From Haliotis rubra (Eukaryota), in NCBI RefSeq assembly GCF_003918875.1, contig NW_025764892.1, positions 1,984,001 through 2,048,000 of the forward strand: a stretch of 64,000 bases of DNA, given 5' to 3'. Numbering within the stretch: position 1 is the first letter of the stretch; each line of letters starts with the position of its first letter. Under the pieces are notes generated by a model. That model was not told the origin of the DNA. It saw only the letters and a list, made by a program, of their open reading frames with translations, and made no database searches. Positions 53,845 to 64,000 of the stretch are shown here, in pieces. A program made the translations under genes and the position numbers.

Positions 53845-56241
53845 ATTTAGTGTGGTGAGTGACATTATCAGCGAAACCTTCTGAAACATTTGGGTCCATC
53901 AAAGCAGAGACCATATCTATTATATGGTCTCTGATCAAAGTATATGAATGGAATTATCATACAGAAGTTCCAGACACGTTCGATATTGGACAAATGAAGT
54001 ATGAAAAAAGGATCAGTTATGTTGAAATAAGAAATAAGATTATAATGGCCAAAATACACGTTTATGTAAGGTAGCGTTATTCTCACAAATGAGTATCAGG
54101 TTAGCCACAAGTATAATCCCCAATATCACATATAGCATAGCTATTTACTTGCATATAGTATAGATCGCGGTATTAACTACACACAAGACACATAATAATG
54201 ATTTCAGATCAGTCATGGACCAGATACAGAATTTTCCGTTTCCATAAAGTACTCTCTATCTCTCTCTGATTATATAATTTGATTGAATATGACGATTTCT
54301 CCCCACACAAATGGAATGTAGAGGACAGCCCGTCTGCCCTAAGATCGGAATGTTGGAAGTTCATCTGGTGGTCGCTTCCTACCGACATTAGGTGGTTACA
54401 ATTACCAGTCAAAAGTTAAGTGTAATTGTCGAAATTAAGCGGCATAGTATCTTTACATTACGTTTCAGACTAACATATAGTCTATAGTCTATGGTGCCTC
54501 TTCTCCAATAAACAATGCGCATGTGGTAAATAGAGTTGACAGGACTTCAAAGTAAGATATATATCGAAGAAGGTTTGGGAATCGTAGTTATATTGTATGT
54601 TTCTGTACAATACTGTACTTGACCAATAAGGTCGGATGGTCTTGTCTGATGTCGTCTAATATACATGTATACACTATTTCCGTACAACTTTGATTAACTG
54701 ATAAAAAGTTTCTAAATTCTTTGAGTGGCATTTTTAGAAGTTGGAGAGTCAGATAAGGACAGACTTTATGGACAAACAACTTCTTTATTGAGATAATGCG
54801 AAGTTCCGATACAAATTCTTAGAAAGTTTCTAAATAAAAAGTATTCCTTATAATTATTTGCATAGTTTAGCAATATTTCGTTTTTTCCGTACACAGTCCG
54901 AAATTTTATAACACCTATCTGTGTTCAGGTATTGAACAGGATATGTGGTCAAACAGTCTTGTTTCTGACATTCAGGACGTCAGAAAGTACTTTTCTTTGT
55001 GATGTATTCACTGACCTGAAAAGTGTAACTCCCGAGAAATTCCGGCGTTTATGTAGTTTGATAAGTGTTGTGAATGAAAGGACGAAGCAACCATTTAAGC
55101 TGTCAGTGTCAGTGAAGCAGGCAACATTCGCATCACGGTAAGGCTGTTAATTGATTTATCAGGACATGTAGAAACTTATATGTATTACTACCAACGTATT
55201 CTGTTATAGTTTGTAATTTCAGTTAAATACAACGGACTACGCTCGTCCTTCGATTTGTTTTGACGCGGTATTGTAAAAAGTTGGATCGAAATTCAACCGA
55301 AATATGTAGTACCTGCGAGTTAATTCTGACGTGAAGTGGATACTTTTCGTATAGTTATTCAGCCATAAGACTGACAATATGTCTTTAATGATATAAACTG
55401 ATGATTAAATAATGATGTGCCGCCCACTATTTTTAGTACTAGTTGTAGAACTAGTATTCAGGTGGGCGTTGTGATTTTGCATGGGGCAATGAAGTATAAA
55501 CCCTGATTGCACGGTTTACCCCGGTTTGAATGCAGTCATTCCAATGAATTAGCCATCCCCTTTCCCACAATTGACTAATTTTACACACGAAGAGTCTCAG
55601 TTATTAGGTGATGAAACTACCGATCTAGGTCAGGTGGTTCAAGGTATATAATGCACAGCTGTAGTCACAATTTAGTCCATGATAACGCTGGATAAAAACT
55701 TCTACTCCCGCTATAGTTCAAGGTGTGCATTCAAGTTGACGGTAGGTATACATGTAATTTACTTCACATGTACTGCTATACAGCATAATGCTCACATGAA
55801 GAAATCTATCTTGCAGTTGCACTACTTGAACTTATAGTAACACCTTACCTCTAACTGAACTTCGAATCCCGAATCTGACCGACTACACATATACCATGCA
55901 ACTAAAACTGGTTCCCATGACGATAGCTGCCATTTGATAGACCGATATGCGATGTATGTATTCTTTTAGCATGTAGAGAGAGCACACGTAGCACATATTT
56001 GGAAGGCGCGGAAATACAGGGGTTGTGACGAAGGTCTGGTAATATATATTGTGTGCTCTAATCTTATCAGTGACTGTTTTCCAGGGTTGGATGTCCGAGC
56101 GTGGTTGAATCGTTACATTACGTTTAGGGAAGACAAAGGGAATTTAAGGAAAGTGCTAATTATTTGCATAAACAACCATTAGCGTGCCTCAGCAATTTGT
56201 TCTTTATGCTATAATATAACATACGGTCACTCATTAGGTCA

Positions 56242-56405
56242 GTGGGGTGGGTATCATATAAGTTCAAGCGTTCGGTCGTCACGCCGAAGACCCCGGGTTC
56301 GATTCCCCCATGGTTACAATGTGTGAAGCCCATTTCTGGTGTCCCCTGTGTGCTATTTCTGGAATATTACTAAATGCGGTGTAAAACTCAACTCGCTCAC
56401 TCATC
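56242..56405 (+). mobile_element. tRNA-derived SINE family B, copy
   Basis: cacgccgaagaccccgggttcgattcccc...gaagcccatttctggtgtcccc...ggaatatt...gtaaaactcaactc. Confidence 0.85.
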
Positions 56406-56584
56406 CATCTCTGTGTGGTTACCTTATAGTCAGTTTCACACCTGGTAAAGTTGTGAATGACATTCCAAGATTTCAAGGTATCGTTACATACGCCCGAGAA
56501 TTGTATAATATGTATTAACCCTCTGTTGGAACAGATGCAACTATGGGTCTGGATTGATTGGTACAGCGGTGACGCAGTCCACAG

Positions 56585-57574
56585 ATGCAACCTCAGTGTC
56601 TCCTGACACTATGCAGTCACGTGTATGCTAGACATACACGTGCAGCACGGATCTTATGCAACACGTTCCGGAACTCGACACAAGCTGCTTCGAAACATTT
56701 GAAAGAGGACGCTAAGGGAAGCAACATGGACACTACAATAATGGCACACAGTGACCCGTCAACGTATATATTTGAACTAGGCGGACCTCTACTTCTGACC
56801 GCTCCTCACGGGATTGCCTTGTGGAGAGGTGGATGGGTCGGTTTTAAGAAAGAGAAACATCTAGATGAAGTCTTGGTATCGGAAATCGTTCTGAAGCTGG
56901 CAAAGCGTATGTCGACGGTGTTCGGCGTCCCGGCCAGCTTTATGGTCTGGAATGTTCCACGTACAAGACCATACGATGAAAGGAACTTAGATCCAAACTT
57001 CTTACCCAAAGAACTATTTGGTTTATCCCCGTGGCATCAAGCTTTGGAGTCATTTCGGTCTTACGGATGTGACGTCAAACTACCAATCCTCCATGTTGAT
57101 ATTCACGGAAAACGGGACCGAAAAAGCGACTTGGCCTTAGATGTGGGTATGGGCGGTATGAAAGCGTACTGGAAGGATAAGGAAATGGTAACCAAATTAA
57201 GAAAAGGTTTTGAAGAAAGTTTCACAAATATGCTTGGACCCGTAGGAATTGTGAAAAACGGCATGCCCTTTACGGTAGACATGGACCCAGAGATGTCCGG
57301 ATTTAGGCTAGACCGATCTGTGTTCACTCTGTCAACCCAGTCTGCCATGTTGGGCATACCATCAGTGCAATTAGAGATTCCCAAGACCATGAGACAAAAA
57401 CTTAATGAGGACGACGATTTTCTGTTGAAATTTGCTGATTGTATCATGCATGTATTTGAGCAAGGGATTTGTCAAGGGGCACTGCCTTCTCGTGATTGGT
57501 ACAGTAGTCACTGTCGGACACCTGCCACTGATATAGACAGGGTACTGATGGAGCTGAAGCAACATCAACAATAA
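56585..57574 (+). CDS. Zn-dependent amidohydrolase, N-formylglutamate amidohydrolase (FGase)-like, 329 aa, uninterrupted ORF
   Basis: The motif order PLLLTAPHG ... HLDE ... DPN ... WHQAL ... LHVDIHG ... DVG ... SVQLEIP matches the carboxypeptidase-A-like fold of FGase and gamma-PGA hydrolases. The N-terminus is basic and free of acidic residues. Confidence 0.8.
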   Translation: MQPQCLLTLCSHVYARHTRAARILCNTFRNSTQAASKHLKEDAKGSNMDTTIMAHSDPSTYIFELGGPLLLTAPHGIALWRGGWVGFKKEKHLDEVLVSEIVLKLAKRMSTVFGVPASFMVWNVPRTRPYDERNLDPNFLPKELFGLSPWHQALESFRSYGCDVKLPILHVDIHGKRDRKSDLALDVGMGGMKAYWKDKEMVTKLRKGFEESFTNMLGPVGIVKNGMPFTVDMDPEMSGFRLDRSVFTLSTQSAMLGIPSVQLEIPKTMRQKLNEDDDFLLKFADCIMHVFEQGICQGALPSRDWYSSHCRTPATDIDRVLMELKQHQQ

Positions 57575-58527
57575 AAACGTCAACTGCGGGTTTGAATTTT
57601 ATCATTAATATTTCCAATACAGGGTTAAAGCTTTCGGACTACCAGATTTTATTCGGGTCTGATTGAAGTACATTTGTCACTTAAGGGCAGACCATTTCAT
57701 ATTCTGTTAACCGGTTCTGTAAAATGTTTGGCTTATGCGAAAATAAGTAAGCAAATATTTAAGCCAAATGCAGCAATATATGACTAACACGAAAGGCCGG
57801 ACAACTTCGAATGATATATAGTTCAAAATCTATCTATATATATCAATTAGGTTTTATTATATTTATTTTATTTATGCATGCTGAGATTCTGTAACGATGG
57901 GGTTCTTTTAACGTCATAGAGGTGATTTATATGTGTATTTGTTTATTTCTATCAGGCATTCATTTGTTGACATGAGTGTTATTTCATTGCATTCATTTGC
58001 GCCTTGATTAACCTCATCTAGATTTGACACGAAAACTAATTACTGATTTTTATCAACGATCTTTTATACATATCAATACCATTTTGATCAGTTGAATATT
58101 GAATTGTACATTTGCATAATGTGTGAGGATGGAAGTAACCGTTTGTGTTGTTTCGTCTTAGTCCTTATTTCACCGTCTACACGTTAAATTGGCATTAATT
58201 GAACATGTCCGTGGAAGCAGACATTCTCAGGTGATATTTTTGTGTATGTAAATATTTCACTCAAAGAGTTATGTTTCATACGGGGACGGTCGCACTGTGC
58301 ACGGTGTGTGGTTTCGAATTCAGATTCATTCCAAACTTACGATTAGTCTAGCAGTGCCTTTTCAAAGTGAAGTGAAGTATTTTTATATTTATATCAAGAA
58401 AGCTATCCGTTTCCCTAGTGTATTTCGAATAATAAAAGAATTGTGATTGTTGTTAAAATGTTTCTTGGTTCGTTATGTGTATTCTTATAGTTATTTCTTT
58501 ACACGATTATTATATAGCTTAAATATT

Positions 58528-59010
58528 GCTGAAGGGGTCGTTGTCGGCACAGGTACTACAGATACGTACCCCAGGTACGTTTCTGAATACAGATATGTAC
58601 CCTAAACAAAGTCAAAATACAGAAATGTACCCGGTACCCTAAAAGGCGGACGAGTCCATATTCCGCAATCCAAAACCGAAACCGCATGTAGTTGTTCCCG
58701 TTCAACTGATTGCGAGTGGTATTCATATGCATCGCGAAATACCCGTTACTGTGTATTCTCATTACTTACATAACGCAATCAAATGTATCTAATACAACAG
58801 TATGACAGTTCCGATGAAGAATACGACACAATGGGAGTGGAATCGTCCTAGAGTACGTTTCTGTATTCTCATTATGGCCAAGGTACGTTTCTGTATACAG
58901 AAACGTACCTGGGCGTGCGCGGATCCAGGGGGTGGGGGGTAGGGGTGCGCGGACCCCCCCGTGTTCCAAATGTACTACATGTTTTATGCCCAGGGTTCCG
59001 AGGATTGGGG

Positions 59011-59055
<45 letters not shown>

Positions 59056-59127
59056 ACGAAAATCCTGTATCCGCCCCTGCCTGGGGTACATATCTGTAGT
59101 ACCCGTGCCGACAACGACCCCTTCAGC
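58528..59127. mobile_element. MULE-like MITE with 9-bp TSD
   Basis: ttaaatatt|gctgaaggggtcgttgtcggcac ... gtgccgacaacgaccccttcagc|ttaaatatt. Confidence 0.9.
58914..59079. mobile_element. Small gcggatccag-type MITE with (CA)n, nested in the host TIR; 6-bp TSD
   Basis: cctggg|cgtgcgcggatccag ... ctgtatccgcccctg|cctggg; removing it restores the host TIR. Related fragments at ~25057-25095 and ~51800-51967. Confidence 0.8.
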
Positions 59128-59264
59128 TTAAATATTGTTGATTGTTACGTTGAACCAACCATACAACAAACTATAAAAAGGATGTGATAGGCCAGTCTGT
59201 TATGTTTGACTTGGCTGAGGCGTGGAGGGTTGTTCATGTTATTAGCTGGACGGCATGGTCCCGT

Positions 59265-63440: not shown

Positions 63441-63841
63441 ATGGCGGGTGTAGGGGGAGTGCCCCAAGACACTAAACTTTCTGGTGACCCGTCATCAATT
63501 AATTCATCAACAGAAAAAAGTAACAGCGACGATGTCAGTTCACAGGAGGACCAAATTCTTCCACCAAGTAATAAAACCGAGTCTGCAGAGATCCAACGTA
63601 AAGACAGCGAATCTTCTTACCCGGAAGAAACTCGCCTTAGCGGATGGCTGGCCAAAGTTGGTGCACTGGGCTTCGTGAAAACTAGCAGACTGTTTTGGTT
63701 TGTTTTTGGCGATGACACGTGCAAACTGTACTATTATCGCAACCCCCAAGACTTGCTGCCGCTGGGAGAGATTGACATTTCGAATGCATACTTTACATTT
63801 GACCCAAATGTCACAGATAAGCCCGGTTTATTTGAAATCAG
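63441..63841 (+). CDS. TBC1D2: TBC1 domain family member 2/2B-like Rab-GAP, first coding exon (PH domain); the gene continues beyond the window
   Basis: LSGWLAKVGALG...FWFVFGDDTCKLYYYRNPQDLLPLGEIDISNAYF resembles the N-terminal PH domain of TBC1D2A/2B; donor ag|gtacgg at 63842. Confidence 0.8.
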
Positions 63842-64000
63842 GTACGGAGTCTCAACAACCATATCTTTTAAGTTAATTATGTTGAACTATTTCTCTATAG
63901 TTCTATGAAAAATGAACAAATATTCATTTGAGACATATTTCATGACTAGTACACTTTATGACATATAGCATATACATGTAGTTGTTAAATTATATATATT

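What the first reader, a model, noticed from the sequence alone, without database searches (positions are those of the whole stretch)
56585..57574. Single-ORF bacterial-type Zn-amidohydrolase in an animal genome, with a possible mitochondrial presequence
Seen: a 329-aa uninterrupted ORF among multi-exon genes, embedded in host SINE/MITE-bearing DNA, so it is not an obvious contaminant contig. Candidate metal ligands (APHG, DE, DIHG) and a candidate catalytic Glu (QLEI) are intact. The first ~40 aa are Arg/Thr/Ala-rich with no acidic residue. Established: N-formylglutamate amidohydrolases (HutG type) and phage poly-gamma-glutamate hydrolases share these motifs and are mainly prokaryotic; vertebrates use FTCD for that histidine-catabolism step. 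Inference: horizontally acquired or patchily retained enzyme of unknown substrate.
Basis: partly seen in the sequence, partly recalled or inferred. Interest (0 to 1): 0.7.

Follow-up and report, generated by a model that had tools for sequence, protein, structure and literature searches.

The report
Mollusc orphan FGase/PghP-like zinc amidohydrolase
The abalone ORF is a real, selected host gene for a probable zinc amidohydrolase, but it is not a recent bacterial import: it belongs to an undescribed eukaryotic enzyme family that is shared with oysters, mussels and scallop-like bivalves and is otherwise found in protists.

Summary
The 329-aa ORF at 56585-57574 (+) is real. It sits at an orthologous, co-linear locus in three Haliotis genomes, between TMEM214 and a PH/RabGAP-TBC gene. 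Its catalytic core is under purifying selection (dN/dS about 0.2), and probable RNA contigs cover it at low depth.

It belongs to a family of at least 744 clusters (at 50% identity). Every identifiable member is eukaryotic: ciliate, dinoflagellates, diplonemids, a prokinetoplastid, a heterolobosean, a cryptophyte, Diphylleia and chlorophyte-like sequences. Long members are fused to BPL_N and GGACT domains. A motif-seeded scan found no relative in 185,579 prokaryotic species genomes.

Annotated single-exon orthologs exist in Crassostrea, Saccostrea, Mytilus and Pinctada. Molluscs form one clade (support 99/97), with Haliotis sister to the bivalves. The gene therefore predates the gastropod-bivalve split. 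Whether it came by ancient transfer from a protist or by retention with many losses is unresolved.

The mitochondrial presequence idea is weak: the start codon and the acid-free N-terminus are not conserved. The substrate is unknown; the fusions suggest γ-glutamyl or N-acyl-glutamate amides.

The parts
55032..55137 (+). Putative non-coding 5' exon; its 5' limit is unknown and its 3' end is at 55137
   Evidence: RNA-like contigs: X2 covers 55032-55091. An X1 contig of depth 2.8 lies near 55094, the same depth as the 284-nt X1 contig of which only 205 nt lie on 56534-56745. The exon end is followed by a canonical donor, CACG|GTAAGG, at 55138. Exon and donor are conserved in H. asinina at L007 7146-7338. 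This is inferred; no joint was listed.
55138..56534 (+). Putative 5'-UTR intron (GTAAGG...pyrimidine tract...AACAG), containing a high-copy SINE-like repeat at about 56110-56457
   Evidence: Splice-site sequences. X1, X2 and X7 have zero depth on the unique parts 55240-56109, while the genomic run X14 covers them at about 16x. The repeat reaches extreme depth in all runs. ARAGORN finds no tRNA in the repeat.
56535..56584 (+). 5' leader within the coding exon, with two upstream ATGs: uORF1 56535-56606 (out of frame, overlaps the main ATG) and uORF2 56543-56557 (in frame, stops)
   Evidence: Most of the stretch, including both upstream ATGs, is identical in the three Haliotis species. The X1 contig starts at 56534.
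56585..57574 (+). ORF of 329 aa (the CDS as annotated in the Haliotis orthologs), stop codon included
   Evidence: Orthologs are 88% identical (H. asinina) and 75% identical (H. rufescens). dN/dS is 0.23-0.28 overall.
56585..56755 (+). N-terminal 57 residues: disordered and poorly conserved, with a non-conserved start codon; the conserved Met53 codon is at 56741-56743
   Evidence: pLDDT is below 50 for residues 1-57. dN/dS is 0.43-0.77. H. asinina has ATG-TAA plus a 7-nt indel at this position, and organism A reads A for T at 56586, giving AAG. Composition compared across orthologs.
56756..57484 (+). Catalytic domain, residues about 58-300, with the FGase/PghP-like alpha/beta Zn-hydrolase fold
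56807..56809 (+). His75 codon (A-P-H-G): proposed first metal ligand
   Evidence: Conserved in at least 90% of 84 members. It follows a beta-strand. The motif matches S-P-H40-A-G of PghP; His40 is a Zn ligand (PMC6506827).
56867..56869 (+). Glu95 codon (H92-x-x-E95): proposed second metal ligand, at H+20 rather than H+5
   Evidence: Conserved in at least 90% of members. It lies at the N-terminal end of helix 1. Its ligand role is inferred only; there was no residue-level superposition.
57104..57106 (+). His174 codon (H170-V-D172-I-H174-G-K176): proposed third metal ligand
   Evidence: D172 and G175 are invariant; H170, H174 and K176 are conserved in at least 90%. The motif matches S-F-H103-G-Y of PghP; His103 is a Zn ligand.
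57374..57376 (+). Glu264 codon (V-Q-L-E-I-P): proposed catalytic general base; the invariant Arg270 codon is at 57392-57394
   Evidence: hhalign pairs E264 with the catalytic Glu165 of PghP and R270 with Arg171. E264 lies at the end of a beta-strand, like Glu165 of PghL and Glu270 of carboxypeptidase A.
57570..57575 (+). AATAAA polyadenylation signal overlapping the stop codon
   Evidence: Sequence. RNA-like contigs end at 57577 (X2) and 57589 (X1), with zero depth in X1, X2 and X7 at 57676-57849, while the genomic run continues.
63441..63908 (+). First coding exon (PH domain) of the downstream PH/RabGAP-TBC gene; conserved synteny marker, not part of the gene
   Evidence: PH and PH_11 hits. 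The same neighbour is present in H. asinina. Co-linearity.

Best explanation
This is a genuine nuclear gene of the abalone. It most likely has a short non-coding 5' exon spliced to one coding exon.

The product is a metal-dependent (most probably zinc) amidohydrolase with the FGase/PghP fold. It belongs to a previously undescribed, Pfam-less family that, as far as members can be identified, is eukaryotic. Members occur in many protist lineages, where the domain is often fused to a BPL_N (glutamine-amidotransferase-like) domain and a GGACT (γ-glutamyl cyclotransferase) domain. Among animals it was seen only in molluscs.

The gene was already present, with a single-exon CDS, before gastropods and bivalves split, and has since been inherited vertically. 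In Haliotis it lacks the ~250-aa N-terminal extension of the bivalve orthologs and has evolved faster.

Proposed mechanism (inferred): His75, Glu95 and His174 hold a Zn ion that polarises the scissile amide carbonyl. Glu264, at the end of a beta-strand, activates water, as Glu165 does in PghP/PghL and Glu270 in carboxypeptidase A. Invariant Arg270 binds a substrate carboxylate.

The likely substrate is a small amide next to a glutamate: an N-acyl-glutamate or a γ-glutamyl amide or peptide. Its identity is unknown.

How molluscs came to have the gene is unresolved. I lean slightly towards a single ancient transfer from a protist into the mollusc stem (about 0.45) over retention from early eukaryotes with many losses (about 0.35).
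For: Real, selected host gene:
- The ORF is confirmed.
- Orthologs sit between TMEM214 and PH/RabGAP-TBC on 67-80 Mb scaffolds of two other Haliotis species, and the region is co-linear over about 16 kb.
- Core dN/dS is 0.20-0.23.
- RNA-like contigs lie only on 56534-57589 and on the upstream exon, not on the unique flanks that the genomic run covers.
- Splice sites are canonical and the donor is conserved in H. asinina.

Fold:
- The model has pLDDT 94.
- The nearest ESM Atlas models are bacterial FGase proteins, including BPL_N+FGase and GGACT-containing ones.
- hhalign pairs VQLE264I..R270 with PghP VQLE165I..R171.
- The PH-G and HG motifs match those of PghP, whose His40, Glu45, His78, His103 and Glu165 are essential (PMC6506827).

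Family and taxonomy:
- The profile search finds 744 cluster representatives, 481 at E<=1e-10.
- Identified members are Willaertia, Stylonychia, Rhynchopus, Lacrimia, Diphylleia, Apiculatamorpha, two dinoflagellates, Guillardia and MMETSP transcripts.
- One member's contig carries the eukaryote-specific neighbour HPF1.
- BPL_N + domain + GGACT fusions occur in at least five members.
- No relative was found in the prokaryotic or viral collections.

Molluscs:
- Orthologs are annotated in Crassostrea virginica, Saccostrea cucullata, Mytilus galloprovincialis and Pinctada imbricata, and one occurs in a scallop-gill metatranscriptome.
- The CDS is single-exon in oyster and mussel, with the shared neighbour RIMC1.
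- The mollusc clade has support 99/97 and appears in 100% of bootstrap trees, with Haliotis sister to bivalves.
Against: - No sequence profile of a characterised family reaches threshold: Pfam, NCBIfam, PHROGs and PDB sequences. Function therefore rests on fold, motifs and fusions.
- The second metal ligand is not where PghP or M14 have it. The role of Glu95 is inferred without a residue-level superposition or coordinates.
- Expression evidence is thin. It consists of contigs at depth 2.8-4.7 from runs only guessed to be RNA, and the splice joint was not listed explicitly.
- Most family members are unlabelled metagenomic or transcriptomic sequences. One (P0018) lies on a compact contig of undetermined origin.
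- The prokaryote and virus scans were seeded by one strict motif, so divergent prokaryotic members could be missed.
- Absence from other animal phyla rests on named hits of word-indexed searches, not on an exhaustive labelled search.
- Seven rows of the 'mollusc' clade are unlabelled sequences, assigned by tree position only.
Confidence: 0.7

Rival explanations
1. One reading: a bacterial-type enzyme acquired by abalone, or a recent ancestor, by horizontal transfer from bacteria.
For: The fold's characterised members (FGase, PghP) are bacterial or phage proteins. The CDS has no introns. Among named hits the gene is absent from most animals.
Against: All identifiable relatives are eukaryotic. 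The motif-seeded scan of 185,579 prokaryotic species genomes found no relative. The bacterial family models do not reach threshold. Bivalve orthologs and a single mollusc clade put the origin before the gastropod-bivalve split.
Confidence: 0.04
2. Vertical retention: the gene was present in early eukaryotes and in the animal ancestor, and was lost independently in most animal lineages and in other opisthokonts. Molluscs simply kept it.
For: The family spans several eukaryotic supergroups: Discoba, Alveolata, Cryptista, CRuMs and chlorophyte-like sequences. In the quick tree the mollusc clade fell next to Diphylleia, a CRuMs lineage often placed near Amorphea, with weak support of 83. Inheritance within molluscs is vertical.
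Against: It needs many independent losses, and no fungal, choanoflagellate or other animal member was seen among named hits. The Diphylleia affinity collapses to a polytomy in the careful tree. An intron-less CDS in all molluscs examined is slightly more in line with a transfer.
Confidence: 0.35
3. It is a true N-formylglutamate amidohydrolase (HutG type) that completes histidine catabolism in molluscs.
For: The best structural match is an FGase-family protein. Six of 84 members touch PF05013 below threshold. UniRef names the Stylonychia member as FGase.
Against: The Pfam FGase model fails for the abalone protein and for most members. PghP and YndL score almost as well as the FGases. The fusions are to GGACT and BPL_N, not to histidine-utilisation enzymes. 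From established knowledge, animals dispose of formiminoglutamate through FTCD and are not known to have the FIGLU deiminase that makes N-formylglutamate; this was not tested here.
Confidence: 0.1
4. The protein is imported into mitochondria through an N-terminal presequence.
For: In the window species the first 40 residues have 6 Arg/Lys, no Asp/Glu and 12 Ser/Thr/Ala. The model gives a low-confidence helix at residues 6-29. H. asinina has a similar acid-free first 29 residues.
Against: - The ATG at 56585 is not conserved: H. asinina has ATG-TAA plus a 7-nt indel, and organism A has AAG.
- H. rufescens has Asp at positions 13 and 21, and the bivalve orthologs have acidic residues from positions 2-19.
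- dN/dS is 0.43-0.77 over the first 60 codons.
- Two upstream ATGs, one of which opens a uORF overlapping the main start, together with the conserved Met53, suggest a shorter product is possible.
- No targeting predictor could be run.
Confidence: 0.15
5. It is a non-catalytic pseudo-enzyme, or a decaying gene retained by chance.
For: The second ligand is displaced relative to PghP. The Haliotis stem branch is long (0.97) and the N-terminal extension has been lost. Apparent expression is low.
Against: All family-invariant residues are intact in the three Haliotis species. Core dN/dS is 0.20-0.23 at dS up to 0.58. The frame is open in all three species.
Confidence: 0.07

Closest known systems
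N-formylglutamate amidohydrolase family (Pfam PF05013 FGase; structures 2odf Atu2144 and 2q7s Ralstonia)
   Different: The Pfam model gives no hit for the abalone protein and only sub-threshold hits in 6 of 84 members. Sequence identity in structural alignments is 11-18%. All identifiable members are eukaryotic. The substrate is untested, and there is no link to histidine-utilisation genes.
Phage/Bacillus poly-γ-glutamate hydrolases PghP and PghL/YndL (Pfam PF05908; structures 3a9l, 5onj)
   Different: There is no Pfam or PHROG hit, while authentic PghP scores 7e-59. Glu45 of PghP (H+5) has no equivalent; the candidate Glu95 is at H+20. The domain is about 80 residues larger, with family-specific invariant D136-P-N138, D172, K176 and D186. 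It is an intracellular-looking eukaryotic protein, not a phage depolymerase.
M14 carboxypeptidases and Amidase_3 (N-acetylmuramoyl-L-alanine amidases)

Membership tests
FGase (Pfam PF05013) | Sequence matches the curated family HMM above its gathering score | tested here: not met
   No hit at E<=1 for the abalone protein. Only 6 of 84 family members hit, all below threshold, with best E 7e-4.
FGase (Pfam PF05013) | FGase three-dimensional fold | tested here: met
FGase (Pfam PF05013) | Hydrolyses N-formyl-L-glutamate to formate and glutamate | not testable with these tools
   Needs an enzyme assay.
PghP / Gamma_PGA_hydro (Pfam PF05908, phrog_4175) | Sequence matches the family HMM | tested here: not met
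   No Pfam hit. Three of 84 members hit at E 0.16 or worse. No PHROG hit, while the positive control PghP scores 7e-59.
PghP / Gamma_PGA_hydro (Pfam PF05908, phrog_4175) | Zn ligands His40, Glu45 (H+5) and His103 | tested here: inconclusive
   The two His motifs match by eye: APH75G against SPH40AG, and IH174G against FH103G. No acidic residue lies at H+5; conserved Glu95 at H+20 is the candidate. There was no residue-level superposition.
PghP / Gamma_PGA_hydro (Pfam PF05908, phrog_4175) | Catalytic Glu165 at the C-terminal end of strand beta7 | tested here: met
   hhalign aligns VQLE165I with VQLE264I. E264 ends strand 260-266 in the model. The statistical support is weak (probability 11.6%, E 0.0026).
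M14 metallocarboxypeptidases | HxxE zinc-binding motif | tested here: not met
Undescribed eukaryotic FGase/PghP-like family (defined here by alignments A2 and A4) | Family motifs: APHG, HxxE, SxxxW, DPN, SPWH, HxDxHGK, DxG, QxE-P...R | tested here: met
   All are present in the window protein. The invariant and at-least-90% conserved columns are listed. The profile score for the window protein is E 3e-143.
Gene acquired by horizontal transfer from bacteria | Nearest relatives are bacterial, and the recipient clade nests within bacterial sequences | tested here: not met
   The nearest relatives are bivalves, then protists. No relative was found in GTDB species genomes.
Mitochondrial matrix protein with a cleavable presequence | Arg-rich, acid-free amphipathic N-terminus and start codon conserved among orthologs | tested here: not met
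   This holds only for the window species and partly for H. asinina. H. rufescens and the bivalves have early acidic residues, and the start codon is not conserved. No targeting predictor was available.

The most novel reading that the evidence does not exclude
The abalone gene marks a new eukaryotic enzyme family. It is the hydrolase core of a conserved BPL_N - FGase-like - GGACT module that breaks down a γ-glutamyl or N-acyl-glutamate compound. The mollusc stem lineage captured it from a protist more than 500 million years ago, in a eukaryote-to-eukaryote transfer, and abalone and pteriomorph bivalves have kept it since. The substrate would be a metabolite or isopeptide not handled by known animal enzymes: for example a γ-glutamyl amine or osmolyte, poly-γ-glutamate from food or microbes, or a γ-linked branch-point glutamate on proteins.
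Probability: 0.25. Interest if true: 0.7.

Novelty: new variant of a known kind. Interest (0 to 1): 0.45.

Why it matters
- **An unannotated enzyme family.** The finding defines a sizeable family (at least 744 clusters at 50% identity) that no curated profile recognises. It has a clear catalytic signature and informative domain fusions, so it can go straight to biochemical de-orphaning.
- **A test case for gene origin in animals.** In molluscs it is a clean example of a phylum-restricted gene whose other relatives are protists. That makes it useful for weighing ancient eukaryote-to-eukaryote transfer against differential loss.
- **A caution for HGT screens.** A prokaryote-like fold and an intron-less CDS here do not indicate recent bacterial transfer.
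- **Limits.** The practical importance is moderate. No function is known yet, and apparent expression is low.

Tried and rejected
- Pfam, NCBIfam and PDB-sequence searches with the single protein found nothing useful. PDB-sequence searches with the A2 and A4 profiles gave only a chance antibody hit.
- PHROGs gave no hits for family members.
- Motif-seeded scans of GTDB genomes and IMG/VR found no relatives. The pattern used was strict, so this is not proof of absence.
- hhalign of A4 against authentic PghP aligned only the catalytic-Glu segment, not the whole domain.
- tblastn of the bivalve N-terminal extensions against 8-21 kb around the three Haliotis genes found no remnant; the best E-value was 0.03, on the wrong strand and in the wrong place.
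- Pfam on the bivalve and protist N-terminal extensions and on Guillardia P0202 found nothing.
- A search of the Atlas's unnamed clusters for other animal members returned only phage-like clusters, which was uninformative.
- Looking up SRA accessions in papers resolved only one of four (SRR23580857, a scallop-gill metatranscriptome). The organisms of SRR27895283 and SRR27896758/65 remain unknown.
- P0079 could not be traced to a contig.
- The HGT compendium paper has no held supplements. Literature searches for the locus names and for the domain combination found nothing.
- ARAGORN found no tRNA in the SINE-like repeat.
- Contamination was rejected because of synteny and co-linearity in three chromosome-scale assemblies.
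- A retrocopy of an intron-containing mollusc parent was considered and rejected, because the bivalve CDSs are also single-exon.
RNA-like depth at 54544-54717 is negligible, and the depth at 54718-54891 belongs to a repeat.
Full report
**Observation.** The window comes from an abalone. The protein has orthologs at 88% identity in Haliotis asinina and 75% in H. rufescens (LOC124111097). In both species the gene lies on a 67-80 Mb scaffold, downstream of a minus-strand TMEM214 gene; in H. asinina a PH/RabGAP-TBC gene follows within the 10-kb flank. The window has the same PH-domain exon at 63441-63908. About 16 kb around the gene, intergenic DNA included, is co-linear with the H. asinina locus; matches to the H. 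rufescens locus are patchier but in the same order. High-copy host repeats flank the gene. Contamination is therefore excluded.

**Selection and expression.**
- Nei-Gojobori dN/dS among the three orthologs is 0.20-0.23 for the folded core, at dS 0.25-0.58. It is 0.43-0.77 for the first 60 codons.
- No public run that holds the stretch is recorded as RNA.
- In three small runs guessed to be RNA (X1, X2, X7; two related organisms), contigs lie only on 56534-57589 and on a short upstream piece. The unique flanks at 54022-54543, 55240-56109 and 57676-58023 have zero depth in all three runs; X2 alone has slight depth at 58024-58371. A genomic run (X14) covers everything evenly at about 14x.
- This is the pattern of a weakly expressed transcript. 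It is weak evidence, because it rests on contigs at depth 2.8-4.7.

**Gene structure.** One X1 contig of 284 nt matches 56534-56745 with only 205 of its letters. A contig of the same depth (2.8) lies near 55094 with its end 37 nt away, and X2 has a contig on 55032-55091. The sequence shows a canonical donor, CACG|GTAAGG, at 55137/55138, and an acceptor with a pyrimidine tract ending AACAG| at 56534. The upstream exon and its donor are conserved in H. asinina but were not found within 10 kb in H. rufescens. I infer a non-coding exon ending at 55137, a 1.4-kb intron carrying a SINE-like repeat, and one coding exon. AATAAA at 57570-57575 overlaps the stop codon, and the RNA-like contigs end 2-14 nt after it.

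**N-terminus.** The window protein's first 40 residues are acid-free and Arg-rich, but this feature is not conserved.
- H. asinina has ATG-TAA at the homologous start, plus a 7-nt indel, and begins further downstream.
- Organism A reads AAG instead of ATG at 56585-56587.
- H. rufescens has Asp at positions 13 and 21, and all bivalve orthologs have early acidic residues.
- The leader carries two upstream ATGs. One opens a 23-codon uORF that overlaps the main start.
- Met53, just before the fold begins, is conserved in all three Haliotis species.
- Residues 1-57 are predicted to be disordered.

The presequence idea is therefore possible for this species but poorly supported. No targeting predictor was available.

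**Fold.** The second, built from 84 domain sequences, gave pLDDT 94.1 and pTM 0.92.
- The nearest ESM Atlas models are a chlorophyte-labelled cluster, then bacterial FGase proteins.

**Active site.** Across 84 members from all parts of the family, D136, N138, D172, G175, D186, G188, P266 and R270 are invariant. H75, H92, E95, S118, W122, H170, H174, K176, Q252, Q262 and E264 are at least 90% conserved.
- I took authentic PghP from the phiNIT1 genome record. It shares S-P-H40-A-G with A-P-H75-G, F-H103-G with I-H174-G, and V-Q-L-E165-I...R171 with V-Q-L-E264-I...R270.
- hhalign recovers only the last of these segments, with weak statistics.
- His40, Glu45 and His103 bind Zn in PghP. His40, Glu45, His78, His103 and Glu165 are all essential.
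- PghP's Glu45 position (H+5) is not acidic here. Conserved Glu95 (H+20, at the start of helix 1) is the candidate second ligand, but that is inference.

**Family and taxonomy.** No Pfam, NCBIfam, PHROG or PDB-sequence profile recognises the protein. Six of 84 members touch PF05013 and three touch PF05908, all below threshold.
- A profile search of 1.84 billion representatives found 744 members, 481 of them at E<=1e-10.
- Every member that could be identified is eukaryotic: Willaertia magna, Stylonychia lemnae, Rhynchopus humris, Lacrimia lanifica, Diphylleia rotans, Apiculatamorpha spiralis, Dinoflagellata sp. MGD, Abedinium folium, Guillardia theta and MMETSP transcripts. One metagenomic member lies next to an HPF1 gene.
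- Motif-seeded scans of 185,579 prokaryotic species genomes and of IMG/VR found no relative.
- One member (P0018) lies on a compact contig of undetermined origin.
- Long members are BPL_N + this domain + GGACT, or subsets of these three. Structurally similar bacterial proteins carry the same partners.

**Molluscs.** The closest non-abalone relative came from a bay-scallop gill metatranscriptome. Searching with it revealed annotated orthologs in Pinctada imbricata, Crassostrea virginica, Saccostrea cucullata and Mytilus galloprovincialis, all on chromosome-size scaffolds.
- In oyster and mussel the CDS is again a single exon, and both genes lie next to RIMC1.
- The bivalve proteins carry a fast-evolving N-terminal extension of about 250 aa with no known domain. 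No remnant of it lies upstream in Haliotis.
- In maximum-likelihood trees the molluscs form one clade: SH-aLRT 96 in the quick tree, and UFBoot/SH-aLRT 99/97 with 100% of bootstrap trees in the careful one.
- Haliotis (100/100) is sister to the bivalves (100/99), and the bivalve branching follows taxonomy. The sister group among protists is unresolved.
- Twenty-eight long-branch or redundant rows were left out of the careful tree; they are listed.

**Interpretation.** The gene predates the gastropod-bivalve split and has been inherited vertically within molluscs. It is not a bacterial transfer into abalone. No other animal phylum appeared among the named hits, but the searches that give names are word-indexed and the exhaustive search gives no names, so absence is not shown. 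Two origins remain open: one ancient transfer from a protist into the mollusc stem, or retention from early eukaryotes with many losses. I put these at about 0.45 and 0.35.

On function, I commit to a Zn-dependent amidohydrolase that uses the PghP/carboxypeptidase-type mechanism. The recurrent GGACT and BPL_N fusions and the FGase/PghP kinship point to an amide next to glutamate, either an N-acyl-glutamate or a γ-glutamyl linkage. Confidence is about 0.7 for the enzyme class, and at most 0.3 for any particular substrate class.

Noticed in passing
window 56535-56606: The putative coding-exon leader has two upstream ATGs. One opens a 23-codon uORF that is out of frame and overlaps the main ATG. 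The other opens a 4-codon in-frame uORF. Most of the stretch, including both ATGs, is identical in three Haliotis species, whereas the main ATG is not conserved. This may indicate translational control or use of Met53.
   Followed up: partly
window 56110-56457: A very high-copy SINE-like repeat with a tRNA-like 'GGTTCGATTCCCC' box, at depth up to about 1.9 million in a genomic run. It lies inside the putative 5'-UTR intron. ARAGORN calls no tRNA there.
   Followed up: partly
P0004, P0005, P0012, P0013, P0015, P0189, P0196, N-terminal residues about 25-45: The otherwise fast-evolving N-terminal extensions of most bivalve orthologs (not Mytilus P0195 or P0014) share a short basic motif, (R/N)R(Y/F)I(T/S)(I/V). 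Its function is unknown, and it is absent from Haliotis.
   Followed up: no
P0076 (family member, 432 aa): This family member carries an N-terminal ubiquitin domain (PF00240, E 9e-9) fused to the hydrolase domain. It is another fusion partner besides BPL_N and GGACT.
   Followed up: no
L010 (SRR22388222 contig, 2508 nt): Family member P0018 lies on a compact contig with 38-140 nt between same-strand ORFs, next to a GNAT acetyltransferase. It could come from a picoeukaryote, a giant virus or a prokaryote. It is the one hint that the family may not be strictly eukaryotic.
   Followed up: partly
window 58766-59187: A (GT/CA)n microsatellite produces spurious ORFs on both strands ('CVCVCV...' and 'HTHTHT...').
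   Followed up: no
L008 and L009 (C. virginica, M. galloprovincialis): In both bivalves the ortholog lies head-to-tail with a minus-strand RIMC1 gene. The Haliotis neighbours are different (TMEM214 and PH/RabGAP-TBC), so the gene has moved, or its neighbourhood was rearranged, between the two classes.
   Followed up: no
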